Part shown: positions 23,260 through 63,320 of the stretch, in pieces | Layout of the letters: every line of letters starts with the position of its first letter | Position numbering within the stretch: position 1 is the first letter of the stretch | IMG/VR virus record: IMGVR_UViG_3300020202_000001 | Location: 62,001 to 126,000 of that record | DNA length: 64,000 bases | Reading direction: 5' to 3' (one strand) | Notes under the pieces: generated by a model | What the model was told of the DNA's origin: nothing | Seen by the model: only the letters and a program-made list of their open reading frames with translations | Database searches by the model: none | Made by a program: the position numbers and the translations under genes

Positions 23260-24696
23260 ATGGCCAAGCCAGGCTTCTACAACGACAACCGCAACCGGGC
23301 CTTCCCGTTCGTGAAGGGCACGGTCGGGGACCTGTTGGCCGCCGCGGACACGGTTGCCGCCCTGCCGGCCGCCACGGTCGTCGACGCCGGGTTCGTCCTC
23401 GGCCTGCGGTCCGGGTTCATCGACGGCGTCCACAAGATCCGGCTGGAGAAGGTCCGCCGCGTCGGCGACGACGTGTACTTCGACTTCGCCTCCGACGCGC
23501 CGGCGCTGGTCGGCAAGCCGCTCACGTTCCACCGGTCGGCCGCGTCGGCCGAGGAGTACGAGACCGAGCACGTCGAGGTGCTGGACGAGGGGTACGTGAT
23601 CGTCAGCGCGGTGTCCCAGTCGGTCAGCGAGGGCGACCCGACGCCGGTCAACTGCGGGTGCATCCAGCTCGGCAAGAGCGGCAGCTTCGTCCCGAGCTGC
23701 ACGGGCACGATGCGGCTGTTCCTGAACGACGACAACTTCGCGGACAACAAGGGGTCGTTCACCGTCACGATCAACGGCGAGACGTTCGTCGTCCCGTCGA
23801 CCGAGCCGAACGGCGTGCCCGGCCCCGACGTCATCGCCGGCCAGACGTACGCCTACACGGCCAGCGGGCTCGTGGAGTTCGACGAGCGGCAGGGCGTGAA
23901 GCGGATGTGCGACCCGGACGGGCCGACGAGCGAGTCGATCAAGTACGGCATCCCCGGCGAGCACCCGTGCCCCGGGCTGGTCGAGTGGTCGCTGGTCGGG
24001 AAGCTGACCGGCAGCCCGGTCGTGACCCCGCCGCCGCCCACGACCACGCCGTCCGAGACGTGCGAGGGCGAGCCCCTGTGGGGCGGGTACCTCGTGACCG
24101 GCCGGCTGGCGGACCTCCTGACCGTGCTCCCGGGCGACGGGGAGGTGACCGGGGCGGTCGGGGCGGGCCTGGTCGAGCCCGCGCTGGTCCAGAACGACGC
24201 CAACTCGTACATCGGCAGCGTGAACGTCGGCAACGCGGACCGCACGCGGGTGGACGCTCCCGGCGACTGCCCGCCGTTGACCTGGCCCCACGACACCGGC
24301 GAAGATGTGATCTTCGTCAACGCGAGCTGCCTGCGGGGCGACATCCGGTTCAAGCCCGGGTACAACGCGATCGTCCGGCAGGAGTCGGACACGAACCTGC
24401 TGATCTTCGGTGCCGAGGTCGGGGCCGGCGAGGGCCAGCCGTGCGACCAGGTGCCGCTGTTCGACGGGGAGGTGCCGCCGGCCGGGAGCGCCCTGCTGGA
24501 GGGCGGCCCCCGGTGCAACGAGGTGATCCGCTCGATCAACGGCGTGGGCGGCAAGTTCGCCGCGCTGCTGGGCGGGACGGGCGTCACCGTGACGCAGCTG
24601 CCGGCGTCGAACAAGGTCGTCGTCGACGTGAACATGGGCGGGCTTGCGGCGTGCTTCGCGTCGAGCGAGTTCTCGGAAGTGTCGGAAACGCTGTAG
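23260..24696 (+). CDS. Virion protein, paralogue 5, with a lectin-like insert
   Basis: [13 protein letters not shown]-terminus; [20 protein letters not shown]; [14 protein letters not shown]. Confidence 0.65.
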
Positions 24697-24745
24697 TACC
24701 ACCGGCGGCCAAGGACGGCCGTCGCACCAGACACGGAGGTCTGTC

Positions 24746-27700
24746 ATGCCGGTCCCCTGCACGGGCTCCACGCCCGGCGTCTTCACGCCGAGCGGCACGG
24801 TCCACACGATCGAGACCGACATCACGAAGGGCACCCCCGTGTACTTCGCCGGGGGCATGTCGTTCCCCGCCGGCCGGTACCGGATCAAGTACCTCCGCGG
24901 CTGCCTGAAGTTCCGCCACGACTTCGACTGGGGCGTCGACACGACGTTCAAGGTCAGCGTCGACCCCGGCAGCGGGGCCACGGACATCGGCCAGGCCCCG
25001 GGCGTCGAGAACCGGCTGCCGAAGGTGAACCACCAGGGCGACGGGTCCAACCCGAACGCCAAGATCCGCGGCAAGGGCTGGCCGACGAAGGGCGAGGCCG
25101 AGGCGGCCAACCAGAACGCCCCGCCGTTCGAGTTCAACCACGGCGGCGGCAAGATCGGCGTGCGGCTGGCCGACAGCCCGTACTCGGACAACATCAGCGG
25201 CAAGCCGAGCCCGAAGTACACGCTCCAGCTCCTGGAGCCGTGCACGGTCCCGATCCCGCCCGGCGTCCCGCCCGAGACGCCCGAGGTCACGATCGTCACC
25301 TACCCGCCCACGCCGGAGGCGTTCCCCCGCGCCCGCGTGAAGTGCGGCGTGCCCGAGGTGCCGGGCATCCCCCAGCTGCCGATCATCAACGTCTGCATCG
25401 TGCCGCCCGCCCCGCAGCCGATCCTGGCGTGCCCGGAGCCGGTGGTGAACATCCCGCCGCCCGAGCAGGCGATCCCGTGCCCGCAGATCCAGGTCGGGGC
25501 GTCGTTCGAGGTGAAGGTCGGGCCGCCGTCCGTCACGCTGACCACGACCTCGACCAACACGACCGACGCGTGCGGCGACGCGACGTGCGGCACGCAGATG
25601 CACTTCGCGTTCCAGCTGCCGCCGACGCCGCAGATCCCCTGCCCGCAGATCACCGTGCAGTCCCAGACGACGGTGACGCCGGGCAACCCCGACGCCACGG
25701 TCACGGTGGAGACGCTCCCGGGCGGCCCGCCGGACCCGTGCCGGTTCAAGTTCAACTTCGCGTTCCAGCTCCCCCCGCCGCCGCCGTGCCCGCAGATCGA
25801 GGCGGAGTACACGTCGACGACGACCGAGGGCGACCCGTCCGCGAGCGTGACGGTCACGAAGACCGCGGACGACCCGTGCCGCTACCTGTTCAACTTCGCG
25901 TTCCAGATGCCGCCCGCCCCGCAGTGCCCGGAGATCGAGGCCGAGGCCACGACCACGGTCACCGAGGGCAGCCCGTCCGCGAGCGTCGAGGTCACGAAGG
26001 AGAGCGATGACCCGTGTAAGTACAAGTTCGCGTTCGCGTTCCAACTTCCACCGGCCCCTCAAGTTCCCTGCCCGCAAATCGAGGCTACATCTACCACGAC
26101 GGTCACCGAGGGCAGCCCCTCCGCCAGCGTCGAGGTGACCAAGGAGTCGGACAACCCGTGCTCCTACAAGTTCTCGTTCGCGTTCCAGCTTCCGCCCGCC
26201 CCGCAGGCACCGCAGTGCCCGACGATCACGGGCAGCGCGTCGGCGACCAGCACCGAGGGCGAGGCCAGCGCCAGCCTCGACGTGCAGAAGACGGGCGACG
26301 ACCCCTGCGCGTACAGCTTCACGTTCGCGTTCCAGGTCCCCAAGGGGCCGCAGGGGCCGTACGGCCCGACCGGGCCGTGCCCCCAGGTGACGGCGTCGGC
26401 GTCGGCGACCACCACGGAGGGCGACGCAGCCAGCGCCTCCGTCGAGGTCAGCGAGCAGTCCGGCTGCCACAAGGTGTTCACGTTCGCGTTCCAGCTCCCC
26501 AAGGGGCCGCAGGGTCCGCAGGGGCCGACCGGCCCGCAGGGGCCGCGCGGGTACCAGGGTCCGCAGGGTCCGACCGGCCCGCAGGGCAGCACCGGGCCGC
26601 AGGGGCCGACCGGCCCGCAAGGCATGACGGGGGCACAGGGTCCTCAGGGGCGTACCGGCCCGCAGGGTCCGACCGGCCCGCAGGGGGCGGACGGCGTCTG
26701 CCCGCAGTGCCCGCCCGGCGCTCAGGGTCCGACCGGGCCACAGGGTCCGACCGGCCCGATGGGTGCTCAGGGTGCCGTGGGCGCTCAAGGTGCCCCCGGC
26801 CCGCAGGGTGCCACGGGGGCGACCGGGGCGACCGGCCCGCAAGGCCCGACCGGGCCGACCGGCGCGACCGGTGCGACCGGCGACACGCCCGACGTCGGCT
26901 TCGCAACCACCGCCAACGCACTGCCGCACGGCTCGCCGCCGACCGCAGACGTCATCCCGTTCAGCGGCGGGCCGCAGAACCCGGTCTTCCTCATCACGTT
27001 CGGCATCCCCGAAGGTGCCCAAGGCGCGACCGGCCCCCAAGGCCCGACCGGCCCGCAAGGCACGACCGGGGCGACAGGGGCCACCGGCGACACGGGACCG
27101 CAGGGTCCGACCGGCCCGACCGGTGCGACCGGCGACGTCGGTCCCCAAGGGCCGACCGGCCCGCAAGGAGCTACCGGCGCGACGGGTGCTACGGGCGAAG
27201 TTGGGCCACAGGGTCCGACCGGCGCTACGGGTGCGACCGGTGATGTCGGTCCGCAGGGTCCGACCGGCCCGCAGGGAGCCACTGGCGCGACGGGTGCCAC
27301 GGGCGAGATCGGACCTCAAGGCTCGACGGGTGCCACCGGCCCGCAAGGCCCCACGGGTCCGACCGGCGCGACGGGTGCCACGCCCGAGATGGCCCTGACC
27401 TCGACGGCGAACACGCTGCCGGCCGGGTCGGCGGCGACGGCCACCGTCTCGCAGACGGCCGGCGGGCCGCAGAACCCGACGTTCGAGTTCACCTTCGGCA
27501 TCCCCGAGGGTGCCGCCGGGGCGACGGGCTCCCAAGGTTCCACCGGCCCGCAAGGTCCCACGGGTCCGACCGGCGGCACGGGCGACATGGGTCCGCAGGG
27601 ACCGACCGGTGCCACCGGCGCTCAAGGGGCGACGGGGCCACAGGGTCCGACCGGCCCGCAGGGTGCGACCGGGGCGACGGGTTCGATGGGTCCGCAGGGT

Positions 27701-29158
27701 CCGACCGGGCCGACCGGGCCGACCGGCGCGAACGGTGCTGACGGCGCTGTCGGACCGCAAGGCCCGACCGGCCCGCAAGGAGCGACCGGCGCAACGGGCG
27801 AGACGGGGCCAGCCGGCCCGGCTTCGGTCGGCGAGACCGGCCCGCAAGGCCCGGCAGGCGCGACGGGTGCCACCGGCGCTCAGGGCAGCGTGGGTGCAAC
27901 GGGTCCGCAGGGACCGACCGGTGCCACCGGCTCGACGGGCTCGCAAGGGCCGATCGGGCCGACCGGGTTCCAGGGCGGCACCGGCGCTTCCGGCCCGCAA
28001 GGCCCCACCGGTGCCACCGGTGCCACGGGTGCCCAAGGCCAGAACGGCTCGACCGGGCCGCAGGGTCCGACCGGAGCAACGGGCGCGACCGGGCTCCAGG
28101 GTCCGACCGGCCCGAGCGGGCAACAGGGCTCGCAGGGTTACCAGGGTCCGACCGGTCCGGTCGGCCCGCAGGGCAGCACGGGTGCCACCGGCGCGACCGG
28201 TGCCCAAGGCCAGAACGGCTCGACAGGTCCGCAAGGCCCCACCGGCCCGAGCGGCCAGCAGGGATCGCAAGGCGTCCAAGGTCCGGCGGGTCCGACCGGG
28301 CCGCAGGGTGCCACCGGTGCGACCGGCGCGACCGGACCGCAGGGTTCGCCGGGTGCCACCGGCCCACAGGGTCCGACCGGGGCGACCGGCCAGACGGGTC
28401 CCCAAGGCCCGATGGGTCCCACCGGTTACCAGGGCGGCATGGGGGCGACGGGTGCCACCGGCGCGCAGGGTCCGATGGGCTACACCGGAAGCACCGGCGC
28501 TCAGGGTCCGGTGGGGCCGAGCGGTGCTCAGGGTCCGATGGGCTACACCGGCAGCACCGGGGCTCAAGGCCCGATGGGGCCGAGCGGCTACAACGGCAGC
28601 GACGGGCCGCAGGGTCCGATGGGGCCGAGCGGCCAGCAAGGGCCGCAGGGCCAGCAGGGCATGATCGGGCCGCAGGGTCCGACCGGCTCGACCGGCAGCA
28701 ACGGCGCGGACGGCCCGCAGGGGCCGAGCGGTCCGACCGGCCCGCAGGGCGGCAAGACGGCGATCGTCGCGATCGACGGCAAGTACCGCGGCCTGTTCTG
28801 CACGGAAGGCCCGGAGGTCTGGTTCCAGGACTTCGTGGACGTCGAGGTCGAGATCGACGAGTGCGGGTGCGGCACGACGCGGCACCCGATCGACCCGCTG
28901 TTCATCAAGGCGTGCGAGCCGGGCTCGATCCGCGTCGCGTCCCACGCCGTCGACGCGCTCGGGCTGTCGTGCTCGTTCCTCGACGGCGGCGTGATCGTCG
29001 TCGCGGTGAACGAGGCGGTCGGTGCCAAGCGGGCGACGGCCGTCGTCGGCCTGGTCGGCGTCCGCAAGGGCTTCGCCAAGGTCCGGTTCCCCGAGTACAG
29101 CGAGGCCCAGTTCAAGGCGAACACCGCCTTCTACCAGTCGGCGTACACCCATGGCTAA
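24746..29158 (+). CDS. Collagen-like fibre protein (1470 aa)
   Basis: Start ATG 24746 with GGAGG SD; N-terminal globular domain, seven Cys-paired repeats, long Gly-X-Y region, C-terminal [14 protein letters not shown] domain. Confidence 0.85.
25472..26500 (+). repeat. Seven ~45-aa repeats CPxI...EGxxSASVxV...DPCxYxFxFAFQxP
   Basis: Counted directly in the translation. Confidence 0.85.
26504..28750 (+). repeat. Gly-X-Y collagen repeats (GPQ, GPT, GAT dominant), about 215-220 triplets with two ~44-aa interruptions
   Basis: Seen directly in the translation. Confidence 0.95.
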
Positions 29159-31157
29159 GCGTCGCCTCATCCTCGACCACCGGTTCGCGCTGGGCGACAC
29201 CGTCCTGATGACCGCCCTCGTGCGGGACATCCAGGCGGCGTACCCCGGCTACTTCGAGATCCTCGTCGACACGCACTGCCGGGAGGTGTGGACCAACAAC
29301 CCGCACGCCCGGCTGCTGCGCGGCGACCAGACCTCGACGATGCCGACGACGCGGGTGGACATCTCCTACGCCAACGGCATCCACGCCGCCGGCCGGGGGC
29401 AGCGGGTCCACATGCTGTCGTGGTTCCACCGCGACTTCGCGACGAAGACGGGGATGGAGCTGGAGCCGCTGCTGCCCAAGGGCGACCTCCACCTGACGGC
29501 CGAGGAGAGCAAGCCGCTGGTCGACGGCCGGTACTGGCTGGTGCTCGCCGGCGGCAAGCTGGACATCACCTGCAAGTGGTGGCTGCCCGAGCGGTGGCAG
29601 GAGGTCGTCGACAAGCTGGCGGCCGAGGGGATCTCGTGCGTCCAGGCGGGGGCGACGTTCCGCGAGCACCGCCACCCGAGCCTGTCGAACGTCCTGAACC
29701 TGCTCGGGCAGTACCCGGACGCCCGGCAGTTCATGAACCTCGTCATGCACGCCGAGGGCGTCATGTGCCCGGTCACCTCGGCCATGCACATCGCCGCCTG
29801 CTACGACAAGCCGTGCGTCGTCCTCTCGGGCGGCCGCGAGGAGCCGTGGTGGGAGAGCTACACGAACGCGTACAAGGCGTTCGGCCCGCGGTGCGCCCCG
29901 GTCGCGACCGAGCACCGCTTCCTTCACACGATGGGCCTGCTAGACTGCTGCAAGAAGAAGGGCTGCTGGAAGCACCGCACGGTGCCGCTGGGCAACCAGG
30001 ACCGTTGGGACGGCCCCGAGCGTCGGTGCCAGCTCCCGGTGATCCTCCCGCACGCCAGCACGCCGAAGTGCCTGGAGATGATCTCCAGCGACCACGTTGT
30101 CGAGGCAGTCATGAGCTACTACGAGAACGGGGAGATCCCGCCGATCGGCCAGGCGAAGGGCTTCACGCGAAAGCCGCTGCCGCCGATCGCAGTGAACACG
30201 GAAGACGAGTTGGACCGGGCGGTCGACACTGACCTACCGGTGCGGTCGTTCAAGATCCCGCACGTCCCGGGCCTGAGCCCCGCCGCGGTGCGGACGCAGG
30301 TGGCGGCCGAGCGGGAGTTCTACAACGCCGCCCTCGGCGAGCCGTTCGACCCGCAGATCCAAAAACCGGTTTTGAGAACCATCCCCCAGCCGTCGATGAT
30401 CGACCACCCGCTGATCGGCGGGAAGCTCACGGTCTGCGTGCTGTGCTTCGGCGACCACACCGAGCTGGCCAAGAGCTGCATCGGCTCGATCCTCGACACG
30501 CTGCCGGCGGAGAACCTCGACCTCCGCATCGGGCTGAACGCCGTGTCCCAGGCGACCATGGACTACGTCATGGGCCTCGACGTGCCGATCGGGCTGACGA
30601 TCCACGCCGAGAACGCCAAGAAGTACCCGGCCATGCGGGAGATGTTCAACGACGGCGCGAACCCGATCACGACGAAGTACGTCGTCTGGTTCGACGACGA
30701 CGCGAAGGTCGTGGACCCGTCGATGTGGTCGCAGCTCTGCCAGACGATCGTGGCGAACCACCCGCTCGGCAGCCGGCTCTACGGCCCGACGTTCATCCAC
30801 GACCTCCAGATGTACGCCAAGGGCGGCCGCGACCCGCTCGCGTGGTTCCGGTCCGCCCCGTGGTTCCGGGGGCGGGGGCTGAAGGTCCGCGGCCGCGGGC
30901 AGGAGGCCCCGAACGGCACGGTGATCGACTTCGCCGCCGGCTGGTTCTGGGCGATCGCGACCGAGACGATCAAGGCCGCCAACGTCCCGTGCCCCCGGCT
31001 GAACCACAACGGCGGCGACATCACGATCGGCGAGCAGGTGCACCAGGCCGGCTACAAGGTGAAGGGCTTCAACAAGGACAAGGCCCTGGTCTGGTGCCCC
31101 ACGAAGGAGGGCGGCGGCCGGCGGGGCTACTCGGAGGCGTTCCCGTGGGCGTCGTGA
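29151..31157 (+). CDS. Two-domain glycosyltransferase: GT9 (heptosyltransferase-like, GT-B) plus GT2-like (GT-A)
   Basis: Start ATG 29151; [20 protein letters not shown] and [18 protein letters not shown] (GT9-like); LTVCVLCF...SCIGSIL...YVVWFDDD (GT-A DxD). Confidence 0.75.
30358..30377. promoter_or_regulatory. Dispersed palindrome, copy 5 (TCCAAAAACCGGTTTTGAGA), intragenic
   Basis: Identical to copies 1, 7 and 8; sits in the inter-domain linker of the glycosyltransferase (IQKPVLR). Confidence 0.85.
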
Positions 31158-33025: not shown

Positions 33026-33622
33026 ATGAACGAACCGACCAGCAGGCCGAGCCGCAAAGAGCTGCTCGGCCTGCTCCATTCGGTGGAGCCCAAGACGTTC
33101 TCGATCCTCTGCCGGTCCCTCGGGATCTCGACGGTGGACGAGTACGCCCCGCTTCCCACCGTAGCCGTGCTGCAAATCGCCGCCTACGACTGGATGACGT
33201 CGACCGACGTCCTCTCGTCCGACAACAAGCTGATCCTCCTGCTCTCGACGCCGGACCGGTTCGAGAGCGTGGCCCGGCTGTTCGAGCAGGAGGAGGCGGA
33301 CGGGCGGTACACGCCCCGCATCCTCGCGATCAACGACTACCGGTACGCCGTGTTCGGCCCGGTCCCGCAGGACCGCCTGCAGGGGTCGTTGAACATGTTC
33401 TTCGACGTGAAGGAAGAGCAGTGGCTGCCCGTGATGCCCCAGCAGGCCCTGACGACCGTCGCCTGCGACCTGAACGTGCTGTTGCTCCGACTCTTCGCTA
33501 GAATGGAGGCGTTCCGCCAACATCAACGCGAGGGCAAGGATGCCGCAACATCAGACGCAGTCGTACGGGGAGGTCAGCAAGCTGCCGCCGAAGGTGGCCC
33601 CGGGCCACGCGAAGGCCCGTGA
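33026..33622 (+). CDS. Hypothetical protein (198 aa)
   Basis: Start ATG 33026 within the tracked ORF 32660..33622. Confidence 0.6.
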   Translation: MNEPTSRPSRKELLGLLHSVEPKTFSILCRSLGISTVDEYAPLPTVAVLQIAAYDWMTSTDVLSSDNKLILLLSTPDRFESVARLFEQEEADGRYTPRILAINDYRYAVFGPVPQDRLQGSLNMFFDVKEEQWLPVMPQQALTTVACDLNVLLLRLFARMEAFRQHQREGKDAATSDAVVRGGQQAAAEGGPGPREGP

Positions 33623-34274
33623 GGTGTGGGCCAGCCCCGAGAGCTACGCCACGACCCTGCTGGTCCTGTTCGTGGACCGGTACGGGACCGAGGGGCTGGA
33701 GTGGCACCCCGAGACGATCGCCATGCAGGTCGGCCAGGACTTCGCGGTCGAGGTGCCGCGGGTCAACATGGACCGGCTGCTGGCGGCGATCACGCTGGTG
33801 ACGACGGACTACTTCTACAAGCGGCTGTCGGTCTTCAACGACACCTGCAACGTCCTGAGCGGCGACGACTTCAACCCGGGCGTGTACCAGCCGGCCGACG
33901 CGGCCGACTGCGCGTGGGGCACGACCGAGGCCCTGCTCATCTGCCCGCCGGACGAGGAGGAGCCGTTCACGGACGAGATCCGCCACTACGTCGGCCGCAT
34001 CCTGCGGGCCGAGGGCTACGTGCAGGCACCGGACATCCTCCGCATCGCCCTCGACGCCGACCTCTCCGACCAGGTGAGGGACACGTTCGCGGACGACCCG
34101 GAGATGTTCCAGGCCCTGCACGAGAGCCAGACCGCCAAGACGCAGGAGTGCGAGCAGCTGATCCGGGAGAACCTGGAGCGGCTGCTCACCCAGATCGAGC
34201 AGCTGCCGCTCGTCACGGGCAGCGCCGACCAGCTCCGCGACAAGCTCCGGCAGAACATCCGGCCCGGAGCTTGA
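33540..34274 (+). CDS. Hypothetical protein (244 aa)
   Basis: Coding-like codon usage; helical; family not named. Confidence 0.65.
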   Translation: MPQHQTQSYGEVSKLPPKVAPGHAKAREVWASPESYATTLLVLFVDRYGTEGLEWHPETIAMQVGQDFAVEVPRVNMDRLLAAITLVTTDYFYKRLSVFNDTCNVLSGDDFNPGVYQPADAADCAWGTTEALLICPPDEEEPFTDEIRHYVGRILRAEGYVQAPDILRIALDADLSDQVRDTFADDPEMFQALHESQTAKTQECEQLIRENLERLLTQIEQLPLVTGSADQLRDKLRQNIRPGA

Positions 34275-34299
34275 CACTTTCCCCCGTTCGGGTATTCCA
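34271..34299 (+). promoter_or_regulatory. Candidate promoter: perfect -35 TTGACA with a weak -10 (TATTCC), plus shared spacer motif
   Basis: AT-rich gap upstream of 34345, with a TAAGGAG SD. The 20-mer at 34280-34299 matches 60803-60822 at 18/20 positions. Confidence 0.45.
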
Positions 34300-34344
34300 C
34301 GCACCCAAGGTTTCCATTCAACGTACGATAAGGAGTAGCGACCC

Positions 34345-34800
34345 ATGACCATGACCGCCCGCGAGCCGAACCTCCAGAACGTCCCCGTCCCGCTCACCGA
34401 CGCCCAACGGGTCGAGAGCGGGCGGATTCGCCTGATGTTCGGCGACCCCAAGCCGGTGCTGCTGACGGCAGACTACTCGGCCGTCGAGCTGCGGCTGCTC
34501 GCCCACGCGTCCGTCCACGGCGTCGACGCCCTCGACCCGCAGGCCGCCAAGGCCCGCGACGACGAGGACGAGGACGAGGAGGACGACGAGGACGATGACG
34601 ACGGCGACCTCCTCGACGACGACGAGGAGGACGAGGACGAGGAGGACGACGAAGACGACGACCTCGACGACGACGAGGATGACGACCTCGACGACGACGA
34701 GGACGACGATCTCGATGACGACGACGAGGACGACGACGACTTCGACGACGACGAAGACGACGAGGACGACGAAGACGACCTCGACGATGACGACGAGTAG
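34345..34800 (+). CDS. Micro-protein: family-A DNA polymerase fragment (PNLQNVP through ADYSAVELRLLAHAS) fused to an 80-aa Asp/Glu tail
   Basis: Matches the PolA motifs PNLQNIP and ADYSQIELRxxAHLS in the correct order and spacing; own SD; intact stop. Confidence 0.75.
   Translation: MTMTAREPNLQNVPVPLTDAQRVESGRIRLMFGDPKPVLLTADYSAVELRLLAHASVHGVDALDPQAAKARDDEDEDEEDDEDDDDGDLLDDDEEDEDEEDDEDDDLDDDEDDDLDDDEDDDLDDDDEDDDDFDDDEDDEDDEDDLDDDDE
34558..34797 (+). repeat. Asp/Glu low-complexity tract (GAC/GAG/GAT/GAA repeats)
   Basis: 80 codons, almost all acidic, punctuated by L, F and G. Confidence 0.95.
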
Positions 34801-34815
34801 AGGAAGAGGAGAGCC

Positions 34816-35073
34816 TTGCTTCTAGTCGAAGGGACCATCCCCATCCACCCCGTGACCACGGCGGCCGCGACGGCCGACCCCAAGGAAGCGGCCCGACGCT
34901 TCCTCGCCGAACACCCGACCGCCCGGCTTGAGAGCATCGGCGGCAAGATCGTTCGGGGGGTGTGCCAGCGCTGCGGCACCCCGGTCATGGAAGACACGAA
35001 GGGCCACGCGTACGACCCCGAGACCGAGGCGTACACCTGCCCGAGCTGCAACCAAGGAGACAACCGGCCATGA
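34816..35073 (+). CDS. Zinc-ribbon protein
   Basis: CQRC...CPSC. Confidence 0.55.
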   Translation: MLLVEGTIPIHPVTTAAATADPKEAARRFLAEHPTARLESIGGKIVRGVCQRCGTPVMEDTKGHAYDPETEAYTCPSCNQGDNRP

Positions 35074-35591
35074 GCCATGTGACCAGCTTCGAGCCCGACG
35101 AGAAGGACCAGCAGATCCGGGACCTCCCGGCCCTGGCTCGCGCCGCCGAGCGGTGCGGCCTGGAGTTCCGCGAGGGCCAGACCAGCTTCCACACCTGGGC
35201 CACCGACCACGGCCGCCTCGTCGGCGACTGGCCGGTCCCGCAGGGGTACACCCAGGCCGACATCGTGGGCGGGCAGTGCCTGCACGCGATGGGCATCCCC
35301 GGCAAGAAGGGCGTCCGCGGGACCGAGGGCTACGAGATCGGCATCGTCGAGAGCAAGAAGAACCCCGGCACCTACAGCATGCTCTTCGACTTCTTCAGCA
35401 GCTCGCTCTCCAGCAAGGTGAGCAGCGGCGCGAAGGACGCGAAGGGGAACGTGAAGCCCGACAAGCTCCACATGTTCTACCAGATCGAGGCGGCCCGCAC
35501 GGTCGCCAAGGCCAAGGGGTTCTCGTTCCAGGAGATCCCGCAGCCGGACGGCTCGATCACGGTGAAGTGCGGCAAGTCCGCCACGTTCTGA
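35070..35591 (+). CDS. DUF1257/Ycf35-like protein
   Basis: Start ATG 35070 with AAGGAG SD; MSHVT..IRDLPALARAAERCGLEF...YEIGIV; context with DUF2997 and AAA+. Confidence 0.6.
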   Translation: MSHVTSFEPDEKDQQIRDLPALARAAERCGLEFREGQTSFHTWATDHGRLVGDWPVPQGYTQADIVGGQCLHAMGIPGKKGVRGTEGYEIGIVESKKNPGTYSMLFDFFSSSLSSKVSSGAKDAKGNVKPDKLHMFYQIEAARTVAKAKGFSFQEIPQPDGSITVKCGKSATF

Positions 35592-35619
35592 GCGGCCACG
35601 GCCGCGGCACCCCGGTAGA

Positions 35620-35639
35620 TCCCAAAACCGGTTTTTAGA
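35620..35639. promoter_or_regulatory. Dispersed palindrome, copy 6 (TCCCAAAACCGGTTTTTAGA), reverse pseudo-orientation
   Basis: Intergenic; perfect 12-bp core. Confidence 0.85.
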
Positions 35640-35652
35640 AGAGGAGCACCCC

Positions 35653-35865
35653 GTGGAAGGTCCCCACATCCTGATGAAGTTCGCGATCGGCAAGCCGGTC
35701 GAGGTCCGCGTGAACGGCGTGAAGGGCTCGGCGTGCCGGGCGTTCTCCAAGCCGTTCGAGGACGCGATCGGCGGCAAGGTCGTCGCCGACGTCCCCACCG
35801 CCGAGATGACTCAGCCCGCGACGGTCGGGGCCGAGGTCAAGGCCGGCGGCGGCAAGACGTTCTGA
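35653..35865 (+). CDS. DUF2997-like protein
   Basis: VEVRVNGVKGSACRAFSKPFEDAIG fits the family pattern as I recall it. Confidence 0.65.
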   Translation: MEGPHILMKFAIGKPVEVRVNGVKGSACRAFSKPFEDAIGGKVVADVPTAEMTQPATVGAEVKAGGGKTF

Positions 35866-35965
35866 CCCCACGACCCGCGCGAGACGTACCCGACGACGAC
35901 GACGACACCACGCCGGCCCCGGGCTCCACCTGGGGCCGGCTCGCTTCCCGAAGGTAAGTAAGCAC

Positions 35966-37549
35966 ATGGCTCGACTGAAAAAGGAAATCAAGGAGGCCAT
36001 CGCGGCCGCCTTCAGCGGAATCTGGATCAACAGCTACGAGCACGAGGACGCCCTCGCCGCCATCTCCGAGGCGTGCAAGGAGCACACCTGGCAGCTCATC
36101 ACCTGGGACCCGGAGTTCGGCGTCCGCAGCCCCGAGGACAAGAACCCGACCCCGAGCGACGACGAGCCGAACCCGGCGATCGCCCTCCACCAGCTGCTGA
36201 AGCTGGACACGGAGGAGAACCGGGCGATCCTCGTGCTTCGCAACGTGCTGCCGTACCTGGCCAGCGCCGAGGGCCGCGTCGGCAGCCCGCGGTTCCTGCA
36301 GGTCCTGCAGCGGACGATCGAGCAGGGAGCCCAGGACGGGCACCACGTCGTCATCCTCTCCTACGACAACCTCGCGGTGCCGCGCGAGCTGGAGAAGATG
36401 GTCTACATCATCGACCACGACCTCCCCGACGCCGAGGAGCTGCACGACCTGATGGCGTCGGTCGAGGACAACGAGGCCAAGCTCCCGGCCAAGGACAGCC
36501 CCGAGGCCAAGCTGCTGACCGACGCGGCGGCCGGGCTCACGCGGCTGGAGGCCCTCGGGGCGTTCAGCAAGAGCAAGGCGAAGCACCGCATGCTCAAGCC
36601 CGACGTGCTCTGGGAGCTGAAGGCGAAGATGCTCCAGAAGACCGGGCTGCTGGAGATGCTGACGAAGAAGACGGTCGCGGCGAACGACACGCCGATCGGC
36701 TTCTCGATGCTCGGCGGCCTGAACGTGCTCAAGGGCTTCTGCAAGAACATGTTCGACAGCCCGAACCGCAGCAAGAAGGTCCGGCCGCTCGGCGTCATGC
36801 TGGTCGGCCCGTCCGGCACGGGCAAGTCCGCGTTCGCCACCAGCCTCGGCGACGAGATCGGGTGGCCGACCGTGCGGCTCGACCCGGGCAAGCTGATGGG
36901 CAGCCTGGTCGGCGACACGGAGGCGAACACGCGGCGTGCCCTGAAGACGATCGACGCGATGAGCCCGTGCGTCCTGATGGTCGACGAGGTCGAGAAGGCC
37001 CTGGCCGGCAGCGGCGGCGGTGCCCACGACAGCGGCGTCGGTGCCCGCCTGCTCGGGTCGCTGCTGACGTGGATGAACGACCACACGAGCGAGGTCTTCA
37101 TCATCATGACCTCGAACGACATCACCGGGCTGCCGCCGGAGTTCACCCGGGCCGAGCGGTTCGACGGCATCTTCTTCCTCGACCTCCCGGGCAAGGAGCA
37201 GCGGGAGATGGTGTGGGACATCTACACCACCTACTACGCCAAGCACGGGCTGACGAAGGAGATGATCGCCGAGCGGCCGGACGACGAGAACTGGACGCCG
37301 GCGGAGATCAAGGCGAACTGCCGGCTGGCGACGCTGCACAACACGACGCTCAAGGAGGCGTCGAAGTTCATCGTCCCGGTGTACAAGACGAGCAAGGAGA
37401 AGATCGTCGCCCTGCAGCAGTGGGCGACGAACCGCACGCTCAGCTCCGACTACCCGGGGATGTACGACATCAACGGGCCGAAGAAGCTGGTCACGACGAT
37501 GGAGGAGGGTGCCCCCGCCCGCCCCCGCCGCCGCGTCACGCGGGCGTAA
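35966..37549 (+). CDS. AAA+ ATPase, Ycf46-like (degenerate first module, active second module)
   Basis: Walker A GPSGTGKS, Walker B VLMVDEVEK, sensor MTSND, LPPEFTRAERFD. Confidence 0.85.
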   Translation: MARLKKEIKEAIAAAFSGIWINSYEHEDALAAISEACKEHTWQLITWDPEFGVRSPEDKNPTPSDDEPNPAIALHQLLKLDTEENRAILVLRNVLPYLASAEGRVGSPRFLQVLQRTIEQGAQDGHHVVILSYDNLAVPRELEKMVYIIDHDLPDAEELHDLMASVEDNEAKLPAKDSPEAKLLTDAAAGLTRLEALGAFSKSKAKHRMLKPDVLWELKAKMLQKTGLLEMLTKKTVAANDTPIGFSMLGGLNVLKGFCKNMFDSPNRSKKVRPLGVMLVGPSGTGKSAFATSLGDEIGWPTVRLDPGKLMGSLVGDTEANTRRALKTIDAMSPCVLMVDEVEKALAGSGGGAHDSGVGARLLGSLLTWMNDHTSEVFIIMTSNDITGLPPEFTRAERFDGIFFLDLPGKEQREMVWDIYTTYYAKHGLTKEMIAERPDDENWTPAEIKANCRLATLHNTTLKEASKFIVPVYKTSKEKIVALQQWATNRTLSSDYPGMYDINGPKKLVTTMEEGAPARPRRRVTRA

Positions 37550-47057: not shown

Positions 47058-48209
47058 TTGGCGACGAAGACCATGCCCGAAACCGGGCTCCCCGTGCTGT
47101 ACAGCCGGCGGAGCGACAAGAAGATCCAGACCTGGCGCATCGAGGTCGACCCCGCCGGCCGGTTCCGCGTCCACAGCGGGATCGAGGACGGCAAGACCGT
47201 CACCAGCGAGTGGACCCAGTGCGTCGGGAAGAACCCTGGCAAGAAGAACGCGACGACGCCCCAGCAGCAGGCGGAGCTGGAGGCCCGCGCCCTGTGGAAG
47301 AAGAAGCAGGACGAGGGCTACAAGGTGAACGTCGCCGACGTGGACGTCCAGACGGCCTTCTGGCCGATGCTGGCCGAGCACTACGACGACTTCCCCGAGC
47401 TGGTGAAGGCCGCGTTCGCGGCGGGCGAGACCGTGATGTGCCAGCCGAAGCTGGACGGCATGCGGTGCGTGACCCGCCTCGACGGGATGTGGAGCCGCAA
47501 CGGCAAGCCGGTGCCGTCCGCCCCGCACGTCTACGAGGCCCTGTCCAAGCAGCTCCGGCACTACGCCCAGGTGACGTTCGACGGGGAGCTGTACGCGGAC
47601 AAGTTCGCGGACGACTTCAACAAGATCATCTCGCTGGCGAAGAAGGGCAAGCCGAAGCCGGCCGACCTGGCCGAGTCGGCCGAGCACCTGCAGTACCACG
47701 TCTACGACGCCCACTCGGCGGCCCTGCCCGACCGGCCGTTCTCGAAGCGGCACGCGTTCCTCCGCGACGTGGTCGAGCTGGTGAACCACCCCGCGATCGT
47801 GCTCGTCGAGACGGTCGTCGCCCAGGACATGGAGCACATCGAGACGCTCTTCGGGCAGTGGCGGGCGAAGGGGTACGAGGGGGCGATGATCCGCCTCGAC
47901 CGGCCGTACGAGAACAAGCGGTCCCGGAGCCTGCTGAAGTTCAAGCAGTTCGTCGAGGAGGAGTTCAAGGTCGTCGACGTGATCGAGGGCGTCGGCAACA
48001 AGTCCGGGATGGCGGGCGCGCTGGAGTTCAAGACCGCGGCGGGGCGTAAGTTCACCGCCGCGATCATGGGCAACCGCGCGTTCTTCCGAAAGCTCCTCGC
48101 CGACAAGAAGAACGTGAAGGGCAAGGTCGCCACGGTGCAGTTCCAGAACTACACCCCGGACGGGAGCCCCCGGTTCCCGTGCGTCAAGGCGATCCGCGAC
48201 TACGAGTAG
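47058..48209 (+). CDS. lig: ATP-dependent DNA ligase with an N-terminal WGR-like domain
   Basis: Motif I QPKLDGMR, motif III FDGELY, YHVYDA, motif IV GYEGAMIR, motif V LLKFK, OB-fold TVQFQNYTPDGSPRFP. Confidence 0.9.
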   Translation: MATKTMPETGLPVLYSRRSDKKIQTWRIEVDPAGRFRVHSGIEDGKTVTSEWTQCVGKNPGKKNATTPQQQAELEARALWKKKQDEGYKVNVADVDVQTAFWPMLAEHYDDFPELVKAAFAAGETVMCQPKLDGMRCVTRLDGMWSRNGKPVPSAPHVYEALSKQLRHYAQVTFDGELYADKFADDFNKIISLAKKGKPKPADLAESAEHLQYHVYDAHSAALPDRPFSKRHAFLRDVVELVNHPAIVLVETVVAQDMEHIETLFGQWRAKGYEGAMIRLDRPYENKRSRSLLKFKQFVEEEFKVVDVIEGVGNKSGMAGALEFKTAAGRKFTAAIMGNRAFFRKLLADKKNVKGKVATVQFQNYTPDGSPRFPCVKAIRDYE

Positions 48210-51559: not shown

Positions 51560-53056
51560 ATGCAGCAGACGAAGGTTTACGTCGTTGTCGATCTGGGCTT
51601 CGGTGACGCCGGCAAGGGCACGGTCGTGGACTACCTGGTCCGCACGCGCAAGGCCGGCACCGTGGTCCGATTCAACGGCGGGGCACAGGCGGCCCACAAC
51701 GTGACGCTCCCGGACGGCCGGCGGCACCCGTTCAGCCAGTTCGGCAGCGGGACGTTCGTGCCGGGCGTGAAGACGTACCTCACCGAGGACGTCCTGTTCG
51801 ACCCCAACTCCCTGCTCGGCGAGGAGGCCGCCCTGCAGGCGCTGGGCGTGACCGACGCGTTCGAGCGGTTCGCGGTGCACGAGGAGTGCCTCGTCGTCAC
51901 CCCGTTCCACCGGACGGCCAACCGGCTGCGGGAGGTGGCCCGCGGCGACAAGCCGCACGGGAGCTGCGGGATGGGCATCGGCGAGGCGATGTCCGACGCC
52001 ACCGGCCGCGACAAGGTCGCGATCCGCGTCAAGGACCTACTGCTGCCCGCCGACGAGCTGCGGCGGAAGCTGGAGTGGGTGCGGCAGTACAACGAGGGCA
52101 AGGCGCTCGTCTACTACCCGAAGTACAAGGAGCACCAGCTGGGGCAGGGCCTCGACCCATCGGCCGTCGAGTGGTTCCTCGACCAGTGCCGCCGCGTGGC
52201 GGACCTGGTGACGATCGCCGATGACGCGTACGAGGACAAGCACGTCTTCAACTGCGACAGCGACCAAGTCGTCGTGTGCGAGGGAGCACAGGGCGTCCTG
52301 CTCGACGAGCACTACGGGTTCCACCCCTACACGACGTGGAGCACGGTGACCCCGCACCGGGTGCTGGAGAAGATCCGCGAGGCGAACTACATCACCGGCA
52401 CGGTCGGCGGCGAGGTCGAGCGGGTCGGCGTGACGCGGGCGTACCAGACGCGGCACGGGGCCGGGCCGTTCCCGACGTGGGAGCGGGGCGGCAAGGCGTG
52501 GGAGCACCTCGGTGCCCCCGACGCCAACAAGGAGCACGAGTGGCAGGGCAAGTTCCGCGTGGGCTGGCTCGACACCGTGCTCCTGCGGTACGCGATCGAG
52601 GCGTGCAGCGTGCCGTGGTCGACGCAGACGATCGACTGGCTGGCCGTGACGTGCCTCGACCGGCTGCACGGGGCGTTCCCGCAGGTGCCGGTCTGCACGC
52701 ACTACGTCCAGTACCGGGCGGACGCGAAGAAGGTCAGGCACCTGCCGGTCGCCCGCCGGCCCACGCTCGGCGGGCAGGAGATCCTCACGGAGTTCCTGAT
52801 GGGTGCCCAGCCGAGCCAGTTCCCCCGGTTCGACGTGAGCTACCAGGCGGTCGACTACGACCACCTGCTGCCGTACATCGAGCAGCAGGTGGGCGTCCCG
52901 GTGGGGCTCTCCAGCCGGGGGCCGACGTGGCAGGACAAGCTCGAACACGAGGCGTGGGTCGTGCACGGGATTTACGGCAAGACGAAGGTGAAACATGGGC
53001 CTGAAGAAGTCGGTCGAAATCCTGGCGAAACTCAACTTCAGTTCCGAACGCCTTAG
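51560..53056 (+). CDS. Adenylosuccinate-synthetase-family protein (divergent paralogue)
   Basis: GFGDAGKG, RFNGGAQAAHN, EGAQGVLLD..YGFHPYTTWS, VTRAYQTRHGAGPF, RVGWLD, LAVTCLD. Confidence 0.85.
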   Translation: MQQTKVYVVVDLGFGDAGKGTVVDYLVRTRKAGTVVRFNGGAQAAHNVTLPDGRRHPFSQFGSGTFVPGVKTYLTEDVLFDPNSLLGEEAALQALGVTDAFERFAVHEECLVVTPFHRTANRLREVARGDKPHGSCGMGIGEAMSDATGRDKVAIRVKDLLLPADELRRKLEWVRQYNEGKALVYYPKYKEHQLGQGLDPSAVEWFLDQCRRVADLVTIADDAYEDKHVFNCDSDQVVVCEGAQGVLLDEHYGFHPYTTWSTVTPHRVLEKIREANYITGTVGGEVERVGVTRAYQTRHGAGPFPTWERGGKAWEHLGAPDANKEHEWQGKFRVGWLDTVLLRYAIEACSVPWSTQTIDWLAVTCLDRLHGAFPQVPVCTHYVQYRADAKKVRHLPVARRPTLGGQEILTEFLMGAQPSQFPRFDVSYQAVDYDHLLPYIEQQVGVPVGLSSRGPTWQDKLEHEAWVVHGIYGKTKVKHGPEEVGRNPGETQLQFRTP

Positions 53057-53444
53057 GCGGGCCGTGTGCCACGCCCTGGCGACGGACTACTACAGCGAGG
53101 CCGGCATCGTCGACCGGTTCGAGCTGTACCACATCGCGGTCTGGTACGTCGAGGACAGCCACCAGCCGACCCTCGACGAGTTCGACGAAGAGTTGCAACA
53201 GAAGGCCGCACGCATCGTGCGGCGATTGGTCCCGGAGCTACGACATGGCAAAGGAAACGCGAAACTTTCGGATGCACCCCAAGCTGCTGATGGACGTCAT
53301 CAAGCGGCAGGCCGGCACGCTGTCCAAGGCCATCCTCGAAGGCGTGATGAACGCCGAGGACGCAAGGGCGAAGAAGGTCAGCATCTCGCTGACAGAGGAC
53401 AGCCTCGTGATCGAGGACGACGGCGAAGGGTTCAAAAGCCGTGA
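52995..53444 (+). CDS. Small hypothetical protein (coding-like part ends near 53250; run-on tail overlaps the next gene)
   Basis: GC3-rich codons fill the gap between the AdSS-like and GHKL genes. Confidence 0.5.
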   Translation: MGLKKSVEILAKLNFSSERLRRAVCHALATDYYSEAGIVDRFELYHIAVWYVEDSHQPTLDEFDEELQQKAARIVRRLVPELRHGKGNAKLSDAPQAADGRHQAAGRHAVQGHPRRRDERRGRKGEEGQHLADRGQPRDRGRRRRVQKP

Positions 53445-62780: not shown

Positions 62781-63320
62781 ATGCCCGACCTCCCCGCCAT
62801 CGACAGCTGGGTGCGCGTCCAGACGCCCTACCGGGGCATCTGGGAGGGTCGCGTCACGCGGCACGCACGCGCGCCCGGCTGTTTCTTCTTCATGCCGAAG
62901 CGGATCAACAACCAAGACCTACCGGCGGGGCACTACGAGAGCCTGAACGAAGCCAGGGCCTTCGCCGTCGACATCGTCGAGGAGAAGGACCTCCCGTGGC
63001 TCCAGCCGGCCCCGCCGCCGGAGGAGGACGAGCCGGTCCCGCCGATCGAGGTGCCGGAGCCGGCGAGGCTGTGGAACGCCCAGAGCCACACGAAGAGCAC
63101 GCCCAGCCCGAAGCGGAAGGTCGTGCCCCGGCACCCGGTCGTCGTGGACGCCGGCGAGGACCCGCCCAAGCCAGTCGAGGCGGTGATCCCGCCGGAACTC
63201 AAGGCTGAAGAGCCGCCGCCGGCACCGCAGAAGCGGGCGAGGCGTCGGATCGACGACCTGCACGAAGGCCCAACCGATGGCCAAGACGAAACAGGGCCAC
63301 AAGGCCCGTCCAATCCGTAA
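62781..63320 (+). CDS. Hypothetical protein with a Pro-rich tail
   Basis: 179-aa ORF. Confidence 0.5.
   Translation: MPDLPAIDSWVRVQTPYRGIWEGRVTRHARAPGCFFFMPKRINNQDLPAGHYESLNEARAFAVDIVEEKDLPWLQPAPPPEEDEPVPPIEVPEPARLWNAQSHTKSTPSPKRKVVPRHPVVVDAGEDPPKPVEAVIPPELKAEEPPPAPQKRARRRIDDLHEGPTDGQDETGPQGPSNP

What the first reader, a model, noticed from the sequence alone, without database searches (positions are those of the whole stretch)
34345..34800. Micro-protein: the catalytic-motif core of a family-A DNA polymerase fused to an 80-residue acidic tail
Seen: EPNLQNVPV...GRIRLMF...LLTADYSAVELRLLAHAS, then a near-pure D/E tract and a stop. The gene has its own TAAGGAG SD, a TTGACA upstream, intact codon usage, and no other polymerase sequence on either side. 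Known: PolA has PNLQNIP...RIRxAF...xADYSQIELRxxAHLS in this order, and the motif A Asp is catalytic; polyanionic phage proteins such as Ocr act as DNA mimics. Inference: about 50 residues cannot polymerise alone. Options are a decoy for host anti-phage sensors that detect replication proteins, a dominant-negative or complementing piece of a split polymerase, or an exapted remnant.
Basis: partly seen in the sequence, partly recalled or inferred. Interest (0 to 1): 0.78.

Follow-up and report, generated by a model that had tools for sequence, protein, structure and literature searches.

The report
Polymerase-fragment head on a polyacidic tail
A soil jumbo phage carries a small, well-formed gene whose first 60-75 residues are a leftover piece of a bacterial-type DNA polymerase I and whose last 80 residues are almost pure Asp/Glu. 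It cannot be a polymerase, and it most likely acts, if at all, through the polyanionic tail, because related phages have acid-tailed genes with unrelated heads at the same spot.

Summary
ORF 34345-34800 (+, 151 aa) matches Pfam DNA_pol_A above the curated cut-off (aa 4-56 = profile 122-171 of 381). An 81-residue tail follows that is 89% D/E. The ORF has an AAGGAG 9 nt before the ATG, an in-frame stop just upstream, and phage-typical codon statistics. Two soil-metagenome assemblies reproduce it without a difference, so it is not a chimera.

The window lies in a complete 224-kb jumbo phage. That phage has its own full UDG-PolA gene with its own, very different motif A, so the "split polymerase" reading is refuted. 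The head resembles cellular Pol I (40-61% identity; the named or titled matches are Planctomycetota) and barely resembles the phage lineage's PolA. That weakens the "decoy for sensors of phage replication proteins" reading.

No protein with the same architecture was found in any collection searched, so this is a singleton. However, three related phage lineages carry a small acid-tailed gene with an unrelated head in the same slot, directly after the conserved 244-aa gene.

Best reading: a chimeric accessory gene made by capture of a polA fragment onto, or seeding, a polyacidic tail. The tail would be a disordered polyanion (nucleic-acid mimic) effector and the head a non-catalytic relic. Function and expression are untested.

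The parts
33540..34274 (+). Conserved 244-aa gene of unknown function, used as the anchor for synteny with related jumbo phages
   Evidence: Homologues at 25-50% identity in 58 IMG/VR loci. No Pfam or PHROG hit.
34271..34276 (+). It overlaps the stop codon of the upstream gene and is not supported as a promoter.
   Evidence: Sequence. The sigma-70 scan finds no site in 33400-36000.
34282..34293 (+). CCCCGTTCGGGT, a phage-specific intergenic motif and probably a regulatory element
   Evidence: Five exact copies in the 224-kb genome plus 1-mismatch copies. By my reading of the flanks they are intergenic, and the copies with a visible start lie about 45-85 nt upstream of it. My own estimate of the chance expectation is about 0.1 copies.
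34330..34335 (+). Shine-Dalgarno AAGGAG, 9 nt before the ATG. An in-frame TAG at 34336-34338 closes the frame upstream.
   Evidence: Sequence
34345..34800 (+). The micro-protein gene (151 codons plus TAG)
   Evidence: GC3 is 0.93. Identical in the Logan contigs of two soil runs.
34354..34512 (+). PolA-derived head (aa 4-56), covering motif 2 (PNLQNVP), RIRLMF and motif A (TADYSAVELRLLAH)
   Evidence: Pfam PF00476 at 38.7 bits. PDB Pol I chains. Best identity is 40-57% against 1.84 billion representatives and 61% among 401 Planctomycetota genomes.
34513..34554 (+). Linker (aa 57-70, VHGVDALDPQAAKA), possibly still PolA-derived. Gapped alignments run on to aa 75-77, where Tepidisphaerales-type Pol I has (E/N/S)DEDIH.
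   Evidence: tblastn alignments. A few HMMER hits extend to aa 63-67. This is weak evidence.
34555..34797 (+). Polyacidic tail (aa 71-151): 72 of 81 residues are D/E, punctuated by L and F
   Evidence: TRF array at 34557-34796. AF2 predicts no fold.
34816..35073 (+). Small Cys-rich (zinc-ribbon-like) gene starting 15 nt after the micro-protein's stop
   Evidence: only sub-threshold zinc-finger hits. A small Cys-rich ORF lies at the same place in L011 and L017.
35070..35591 (+). Gene conserved with L011 and L017. The ORF is listed from 34962, but the likely start is the ATG at 35070, which overlaps the previous stop.
   Evidence: blastp gives 32-33% identity with E of 1e-11 to 3e-13 to L011:6661-7380 and L017:6491-7120.
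35966..37549 (+). AAA ATPase, the downstream boundary of the variable slot
   Evidence: PF00004 at E = 3.9e-24 and phrog_8638 at E = 5e-83. Homologous to L011:7636-9645.

Best explanation
The gene is a chimeric accessory gene sitting in a hypervariable slot of a soil jumbo phage whose host is probably a planctomycete.

Origin (inferred): a roughly 60-75-codon piece of a cellular-type polA gene, running from motif 2 through motif A to about the '...AF..DEDIH' position, was captured. It now supplies the N-terminus of a small protein. The rest of that protein is an 80-residue, intrinsically disordered poly-Asp/Glu tract punctuated by Leu and Phe. The fusion point coincides with an acidic D-E-D triplet of the donor type. 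The tail therefore either grew from that seed by slippage of GAC/GAG repeats, or the fragment recombined by microhomology into an acid-tail gene that was already in the slot. Relatives do have such a gene there.

Mechanism (inferred, not shown): the working part is the polyanionic tail. It would act as a flexible nucleic-acid charge mimic that occupies the DNA- or RNA-binding surface of a basic host or phage protein. The flexible acidic domain of SPO1 Gp44 works this way on RNA polymerase, and folded mimics such as Ocr do so in principle. The PolA-derived head is catalytically dead. At most it serves as a spacer or docking module, and it is not a functioning piece of a polymerase.
For: Shown:
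- The ORF is real and the PolA homology is significant.
- Only 50 of 381 profile positions are present.
- The phage's own PolA is complete.
- The head is close to cellular Pol I and far from the phage-lineage PolA.
- No assembly break occurs at the head junctions, at depths of 101x and 363x in two runs.
- The gene has an SD, a fixed start and phage-like GC3 in both head and tail.
- A recurring phage intergenic motif lies upstream.
- Acid-tailed small ORFs with unrelated heads sit 23-86 nt after the orthologous 244-aa gene in L011, L017 and L018/L019, with the downstream 209-aa and AAA genes also conserved.
- These four lineages are neighbours at the base of the main clade of the 244-aa protein tree.
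- Other acidic small proteins of this phage group (L020 and L021) are conserved at their aromatic positions. This shows that such proteins can be under selection.
- The tail is an imperfect repeat (74-76% matches), so it is not a fresh slippage product.
- AF2 predicts no fold.

Precedent: SPO1 Gp44 has a small head plus a flexible domain that is 57% D/E with no basic residues. That domain alone interacts with the RNAP beta and beta' subunits (PMC8208478).
Against: - No homologue with this architecture was found anywhere, so neither conservation nor dN/dS can be measured.
- There is no transcript or protein evidence; no RNA run was listed.
- The common ancestry of the acid tails in the four phages cannot be demonstrated for low-complexity sequence. 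The tree allows one origin but does not prove it.
- In DNA of 69% GC, a 151-codon open frame is not in itself evidence of selection.
- No target of the tail is known.
- The link between the tail's start and the donor's DED triplet rests on weak gapped alignments.
Confidence: 0.5

Rival explanations
1. Non-functional debris. An illegitimately recombined scrap of polA lies next to a GAC/GAG microsatellite-like expansion. The frame is open only because stop codons are rare in 69% GC DNA. Whether or not it is transcribed, it has no role.
For: It is a singleton with no homologue of the same architecture. The head is predicted to be unfolded. It has lost near-invariant Pol I residues: R682 to P, Q708 to A, and no TGRLSS/R668 segment. 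It also has indels in the palm core. The slot is hypervariable.
Against: The gene has a good SD at the correct spacing, tight operon packing (15 nt to the next gene) and a recurring upstream motif. GC1/2/3 of the head (0.76/0.44/0.96) is that of a bona fide phage gene. Acid-tailed ORFs sit in the same slot in three other deeply diverged lineages. The repeat is diversified rather than a recent slippage product.
Confidence: 0.25
2. The head is the functional part. The Pol I-like peptide would mimic a segment of host or phage polymerase, either to bait a defence sensor or a Pol I partner, or to poison Pol I. The acidic tail would serve as a solubiliser or DNA mimic.
For: Nineteen of 26 near-invariant Pol I positions between PNLQN and LAH are kept, by my manual recount of the alignment. 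Retention is higher at conserved columns than at variable ones (19/33 against 2/9). The heads in relatives differ, as would be expected for specificity modules.
Against: The head resembles cellular Pol I, not the phage's own PolA, so it is a poor decoy for sensors of phage replication proteins. The segment is a palm strand and helix that are buried in solved Pol I structures (mapping; burial is from established knowledge). No fold is predicted. The complex prediction with the phage PolA gave no answer. Retention of conserved positions is equally expected if most of the divergence happened in a functional donor before capture.
Confidence: 0.12
3. A piece of a split family-A polymerase that complements a PolA lacking motif A.
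For: None beyond the presence of the motif A Asp.
Against: The phage's PolA open frame (genome 170674-174174) matches profile positions 95-352 continuously and has its own PNLQN...EADFIGAELY, K..YG and HD motifs. Five relatives each have one full PolA and no extra fragment.
Confidence: 0.01
4. An assembly chimera joining a bacterial polA read to phage sequence.
For: The genome is a metagenome assembly, and the acid repeat breaks one assembly.
Against: A 137-kb Logan contig in run X1 spans 33200-36200 with no differences at depth 101. In run X2 a contig covers 33200-34586 (upstream gene, head and the start of the tail) and another covers 34557-36200, both with no differences at depth 363. The head also has the phage's codon statistics. 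Caveat: the two runs may include the source sample.
Confidence: 0.02

Closest known systems
Family A DNA polymerase (bacterial Pol I), motif 2 to motif A segment (about E. coli Pol I 670-718)
   Same: Same order and spelling of PNLQN(I/V)P, RIR..F and ADYS..ELR.LAH, including the catalytic Asp (D705 equivalent) and the steric-gate Glu. The match is significant to Pfam PF00476 and to solved Pol I chains.
   Different: Only about 50 of roughly 400 polymerase-domain residues are present. There are no fingers or thumb, no motif B or C and no exonuclease. R682 is replaced by P and Q708 by A, and there are indels in the core. No fold is predicted. It is not a polymerase.
SPO1 Gp44 (small head plus flexible acidic DNA-mimic domain that inhibits bacterial RNA polymerase; PMC8208478)
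   Same: A phage-encoded small protein with a short N-terminal head followed by a disordered, strongly acidic stretch almost free of basic residues. This is the best mechanistic analogy for the tail.
   Different: No sequence relationship was detected: the PHROGs scan returned only a polymerase family. The Gp44 head is a folded dsDNA-binding domain and its acidic region is 57% D/E, followed by a further C-terminal coil. Here the head is a polymerase fragment, the tail is 89% D/E and it ends the protein. The target is unknown.
Folded DNA-mimic proteins of phages and plasmids (T7 Ocr, ArdA)
   Same: Polyanionic surface. The proposed action is competition with DNA for a DNA-binding protein.
   Different: Those proteins are folded, with acid side chains arranged on a rigid scaffold. 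There is no Pfam match to them here, and the tail is low-complexity and predicted to be disordered.
D/E-repeat regions of eukaryotic DNA-binding proteins and histone chaperones (PMC10250230, PMC10987829)
   Same: Long consecutive Asp/Glu runs that act electrostatically on basic nucleic-acid-binding surfaces.
   Different: Those are eukaryotic and sit as parts of larger folded proteins. No homology is implied.
Acidic C-terminal tails of phage and bacterial SSBs (T7 gp2.5, T4 gp32, E. coli SSB); recalled from established knowledge, not tested here
   Same: Acidic tails with hydrophobic or aromatic residues that dock on replication proteins.
   Different: Those tails are short (about 10-25 residues) and attached to an OB-fold. 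No OB-fold is present here.

Membership tests
Family A DNA polymerase (PF00476) | Significant sequence match to the family profile | tested here: met
   38.7 bits against a gathering cut-off of 34.3, E = 7.9e-10. Matches to PDB Pol I chains at E down to 6e-6.
Family A DNA polymerase (PF00476) | A complete polymerase domain with motifs A, B (O-helix) and C, plus fingers and thumb | tested here: not met
   Only profile positions 122-171 of 381 are present, and the remaining 95 residues are linker and D/E tract. It is therefore a fragment derived from the family, not a functional member.
Split or trans-complementing PolA | A partner PolA gene in the same genome that lacks this segment | tested here: not met
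   The phage's own PolA covers profile positions 95-352 in one stretch and has its own motif A.
Ocr / ArdA-type folded DNA mimics | Sequence or profile membership and a folded scaffold displaying the acidic residues | tested here: not met
   No Pfam or PHROG hit other than the polymerase. AF2 gives mean pLDDT 53, with no confidently folded domain.
Flexible acidic DNA/RNA mimics (SPO1 Gp44-like; a functional class, not a sequence family) | A long disordered region dominated by D/E and essentially lacking K/R/H | tested here: met
   The tail is 72/81 D/E with a single Arg (its first residue) and no Lys or His, and it is predicted to be unstructured. The Gp44 region is 57% D/E.
Flexible acidic DNA/RNA mimics (SPO1 Gp44-like; a functional class, not a sequence family) | Binds a nucleic-acid-binding protein and competes with nucleic acid | not testable with these tools
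   This needs pull-downs or EMSA competition. The one complex prediction run (against the phage's own PolA) returned 'no answer'.
Positional family of acid-tailed small proteins in this jumbo-phage group | A small ORF with a poly-D/E tail immediately downstream of the 244-aa gene orthologue | tested here: met
   Window gene at +71 nt; L011 at +43 nt; L017 at +23 or +59 nt; L018/L019 at +86 nt. The carriers are neighbours at the base of the tree.
Positional family of acid-tailed small proteins in this jumbo-phage group | Demonstrable homology of the proteins themselves | tested here: inconclusive
   The heads are unrelated: there were no blastp hits between them and no shared Pfam family. The tails are low-complexity, so similarity cannot prove common descent.

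The most novel reading that the evidence does not exclude
The slot encodes a family of modular 'head-swappable' polyanion effectors, in which a short head gives target specificity and the poly-D/E tail is the warhead. In this phage the head has been recruited from host-type Pol I. The protein would then dock where that Pol I segment is recognised (a Pol I partner, a chaperone or a defence sensor) and deliver a DNA-mimicking tail there. That would make it a polymerase-derived decoy or inhibitor.
Probability: 0.1. Interest if true: 0.8.

Novelty: new variant of a known kind. Interest (0 to 1): 0.42.

Why it matters
If the tail is active, this is an unusually clean example of gene birth in a phage. 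A scrap of an essential cellular enzyme has been reused as the N-terminus of a disordered polyanionic effector. It sits in a genomic slot where related phages keep acid-tailed proteins with other heads. That would extend the class of flexible (non-folded) nucleic-acid mimics, known so far mainly from SPO1 Gp44, to jumbo phages of soil bacteria. It would also offer a tractable system (head swaps, tail truncations) for asking what such tails bind. If the gene is inert, it still documents capture of cellular polA sequence by a phage that has its own, different PolA.

Tried and rejected
1. Homologues with the same boundaries. I ran four searches:
- a word-indexed search of 5.8 billion proteins with the head and with the whole protein (one weak hit to a 131-aa protein);
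- IMG/VR and JGI metagenome scans (only ordinary 959-aa Pol I genes);
- exhaustive HMMER against 1.84 billion representatives. Of 45 hits at E <= 1e-3, 44 align on aa 3-67, like the six PolA pieces I inspected. The top hit, P0001, is an unrelated repeat protein. None of those inspected has a polyacidic tail. About half are shorter than 300 aa; the six I read are Pol I pieces;
- 401 Planctomycetota genomes (matches listed lie in large Pol I-sized frames, best identity 61%).
Nothing with this architecture was found.

2. Donor identification. The named or titled matches are Planctomycetota Pol I (Isosphaera cluster, Tepidisphaeraceae). At 47-61% identity this is barely better than other phyla (43-53%). 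The donor is therefore 'cellular-type, possibly planctomycete', and nothing more precise.

3. The phage lineage's own PolA as donor. Rejected: about 20 bits over 19-24 aa.

4. Heads of the other acid-tailed proteins as fragments of known enzymes. No Pfam hits.

5. AF2 on the single sequence. No fold: mean pLDDT 53.

6. Complex prediction with the phage PolA exonuclease and polymerase domains. The verdict was 'no answer', which is evidence neither way.

7. ESM Atlas. The whole protein scores 0.90 to unnamed small proteins, most commonly from Planctomycetota. This is probably driven by the tail, and the head alone scores 0.69. I treat it as a lead only.

8. Sigma-70 promoter or terminator around the gene. 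None found.

9. RNA evidence. No RNA run was listed.

10. Homing-endonuclease remnant next to the fragment. No nuclease domain was found in the neighbouring genes, although a relative's polA is split by an HNH ORF.

Full report
**What is there.** The window is positions 62001-126000 of a 224,418-bp IMG/VR virus record with direct terminal repeats, rated complete. It is about 69% GC.

On the + strand, ATG 34345 to TAG 34800 encodes 151 residues. Residues 4-56 match Pfam DNA_pol_A at E = 7.9e-10 and 38.7 bits, above the curated cut-off of 34.3. They cover profile positions 122-171 of 381. PHROGs returns only phrog_17, DNA polymerase.

Against solved structures, the stretch aligns to Klenow chain residues 347-395 and to the equivalent residues of the Bst, Taq and other Pol I chains. 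By my renumbering this is about E. coli Pol I 670-718: motif 2 (PNLQNIP), RIRxAF, and motif A with the catalytic Asp and the following helix.

Residues 71-151 are 54 Asp, 18 Glu, 6 Leu, 1 Phe, 1 Gly and 1 Arg. They are encoded by an imperfect GAC/GAG array with periods of 9 and 24 nt and 74-76% matches.

**Is it a real gene and real DNA?**
- AAGGAG lies 9 nt upstream of the ATG.
- An in-frame TAG sits inside that spacer, so the N-terminus is fixed.
- The next gene starts 15 nt after the stop.
- GC at codon positions 1/2/3 is 0.76/0.44/0.96 for the head and 0.99/0.02/0.90 for the tail. This matches the GC3 of 0.91-0.99 in neighbouring genes.
- Instead, CCCCGTTCGGGT (34282-34293) is a phage-specific motif. 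It has five exact copies in the genome plus near-copies. By my reading of the flanks they are intergenic, and those with a visible start lie about 45-85 nt upstream of it. This suggests the gene has its own regulatory element.
- Logan contigs from two soil-metagenome runs reproduce the locus with no differences. One 137-kb contig spans 33200-36200 at depth 101. In the other run, two contigs at depth 363 meet only inside the acid repeat. A chimera at the head junctions is thus very unlikely, although the runs may include the source sample.
- No RNA run could be listed, so expression is untested.

**Not a split polymerase.** The genome has a second PF00476 locus about 76 kb away. It is an 1166-codon open frame carrying a UDG domain and a PolA domain that matches profile positions 95-352 in one stretch. 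That frame has its own RPNLQNMS...EADFIGAELY (motif A), K..YG (motif B) and IHDA (motif C). Nothing is missing that the micro-protein could supply. Five related phage genomes each have one full PolA and no extra fragment.

**Where the head came from.**
- Against the PolA of this phage and of five relatives, the head gives only about 20 bits over 19-24 residues.
- Against cellular Pol I it gives 46-55 bits and 47-53% identity over 52-57 residues.
- An exhaustive HMMER search of 1.84 billion representatives found 45 hits at E <= 1e-3. Forty-four align on aa 3-67 like the PolA pieces I inspected. The top hit, P0001, is an unrelated repeat protein. Best identity was 40-57%, and none of those inspected has this architecture.
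- The matches that could be named are Pol I of Isosphaera pallida's cluster and of Tepidisphaeraceae/Phycisphaerales.
- In 401 Planctomycetota genomes the best identity is 61%, and the matches listed lie in large Pol I-sized frames.
- Other bacteria and phages reach 43-53%. The donor can therefore only be called cellular-type, possibly planctomycete, and either old or unsampled.
- Between PNLQN and LAH the head keeps 19 of 26 near-invariant Pol I positions, by my manual recount of the alignment.
- It has lost the TGRLSS/R668 segment and has Pro at the R682 position and Ala at the Q708 position. It also has indels in the palm core. This is compatible with release from polymerase constraints.
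- Gapped alignments continue to residues 75-77. There, Tepidisphaerales-type Pol I reads (E/N/S)DEDIH and the micro-protein reads RDDEDEDEE. The acid tract thus begins exactly at an acidic triplet of the donor type. This is weak evidence. It suggests either in-situ expansion of GAC-GAG-GAC or microhomology-mediated fusion to an existing acid tract.

**The context changes the picture.**
- The window's left half is tail and baseplate genes, including a collagen-like fibre. From about 31 kb there follow small unknown genes, an AAA ATPase, an ATP-dependent DNA ligase, adenylosuccinate synthetase and a GHKL ATPase.
- The 244-aa gene just upstream (33540-34274) has homologues in 58 IMG/VR loci, many on contigs of 100-235 kb with 39-66% GC.
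- The interval between that gene and the AAA ATPase is hypervariable. It ranges from 22 nt to more than 2 kb. In L037, L039 and L041 it holds a Lys/Ala/Pro-rich basic small protein. In L020 and L021 it holds a CsrA homologue.
- In three other lineages the first gene of the slot is again a small protein ending in a long D/E tract punctuated by F, L, I or Y, but the heads are unrelated. L011 has a 52-aa Cys/His head, L017 a head of about 100 aa, and L018/L019 a head of about 30 aa, truncated by the contig end. None of these heads has a Pfam hit.
- The downstream 209-aa gene and the ATPase are homologous between the window, L011 and L017, so these are positional counterparts.
- In a maximum-likelihood tree of the 244-aa protein, the four carriers are each other's near neighbours at the base of the main clade. 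This is compatible with one ancestral acid-tail gene whose 5' part has been replaced repeatedly, but it does not prove that.
- Elsewhere in this phage group, acidic small proteins (L020 and L021) are clearly conserved at their aromatic positions. Such proteins can therefore be under selection.

**Mechanism.**
- Shown: the protein cannot polymerise. It is not needed to complete the phage polymerase. Its head is cellular-type. It is predicted to be unfolded (AF2 mean pLDDT 53, head below 50).
- Inferred: the active part is the tail, acting as a flexible polyanion that competes with nucleic acid for a basic binding surface.
- The best-documented precedent is SPO1 Gp44. Its residues 56-122 are 57% D/E, have no basic residues, are disordered, and alone interact with the RNAP beta and beta' subunits. 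Its small N-terminal head anchors the protein (PMC8208478).
- Ocr-type mimics are only a functional analogy, because they are folded and gave no profile match.
- The complex prediction of the micro-protein with the phage PolA returned 'no answer' and is evidence for nothing.

**Rivals.**
- Neutral debris is the main alternative (0.25). It fits the singleton status and the variable slot. It fits poorly with the SD, the packing, the codon statistics, the diversified repeat and the positional counterparts.
- A functional head acting as decoy or dominant-negative (0.12) is not excluded but lacks support. The head does not resemble the phage's own polymerase, and it corresponds to a palm element that is buried in the native enzyme.
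- The split polymerase and the assembly chimera are effectively refuted.

**Verdict.** This is a genuine and curious chimeric orphan gene: a polA-derived head on a polyacidic tail, in a slot where relatives keep acid-tailed proteins. The polymerase motifs are most likely a relic, and any function most likely resides in the tail. Interest is moderate. The architecture is new as far as these searches reach, but there is no evidence yet of expression, conservation or target.

Noticed in passing
window 34280-34294; also genome positions +5224, +122805 (window 60805), +187468, -19458, with 1-mismatch copies at +47552, -11808, -4102: An intergenic motif, tcCCCCGTTCGGGTa, recurs upstream of several genes. 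It is probably a phage promoter or operator element. Some copies are followed by a second palindrome, caaaaaccggttttgagatc.
   Followed up: partly
own genome 170674-174174 (outside the window; L162): The phage's own DNA polymerase is a fusion of a uracil-DNA-glycosylase-superfamily domain (aa 140-295) with a divergent PolA (aa 797-1095). It has a long insertion between PNLQN and motif A.
   Followed up: yes
L155:1205-1843 (-), in the record that holds L017: A relative's polA is interrupted between profile positions of about 300 and 287 by a 213-aa HNH endonuclease ORF. polA genes of this phage group are therefore targets of homing elements.
   Followed up: partly
L037:5687-6175, L039:5700-6065, L041:5730-6113: In three relatives the same slot holds a Lys/Ala/Pro-rich (histone-H1-like composition) basic small protein instead of an acidic one.
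   Followed up: no
L020:5668-5889 (also L021:6250-6474 and L049): A CsrA (global regulator) homologue lies in the slot after the 244-aa gene: directly after it in L020 and L049, and after two further small ORFs in L021. Pfam PF02599, E = 2e-19, tested on the L020 copy only.
   Followed up: partly
L020:9960-10274 and L021:10330-10665: These are homologous acidic small proteins (104-111 aa) with conserved aromatic motifs (DDDFIDE.WQFV, SDFS.P.V.W). They follow an 881-885-aa gene.
   Followed up: partly
window 24644-29158: A 1504-aa ORF with 13 collagen triple-helix repeat stretches (PF01391, E = 4e-90), presumably a tail fibre. It is followed by a 711-aa protein with a glycosyltransferase-9-like domain (29022-31157).
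   Followed up: no
window 47058-48209, 51560-53056, 53245-54948: An ATP-dependent DNA ligase, an adenylosuccinate synthetase (an auxiliary purine-metabolism gene) and a GHKL-type ATPase lie downstream of the finding.
   Followed up: no
window 63277-64000 (the ORF runs on to genome 127079); genome 175018-177171; genome 182369-182956: Other proteins of this phage also carry long D/E tracts (23-24 of 30 residues). One of them, at 175018-177171, combines the acid tract with a KKPAG-type basic repeat.
   Followed up: no
whole micro-protein (ESM Atlas): The nearest feature-space clusters (score 0.90) are unnamed 118-152-aa proteins, most commonly from Planctomycetota. This hints that small acid-tailed proteins are frequent in the presumed host phylum or its phages.
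   Followed up: no
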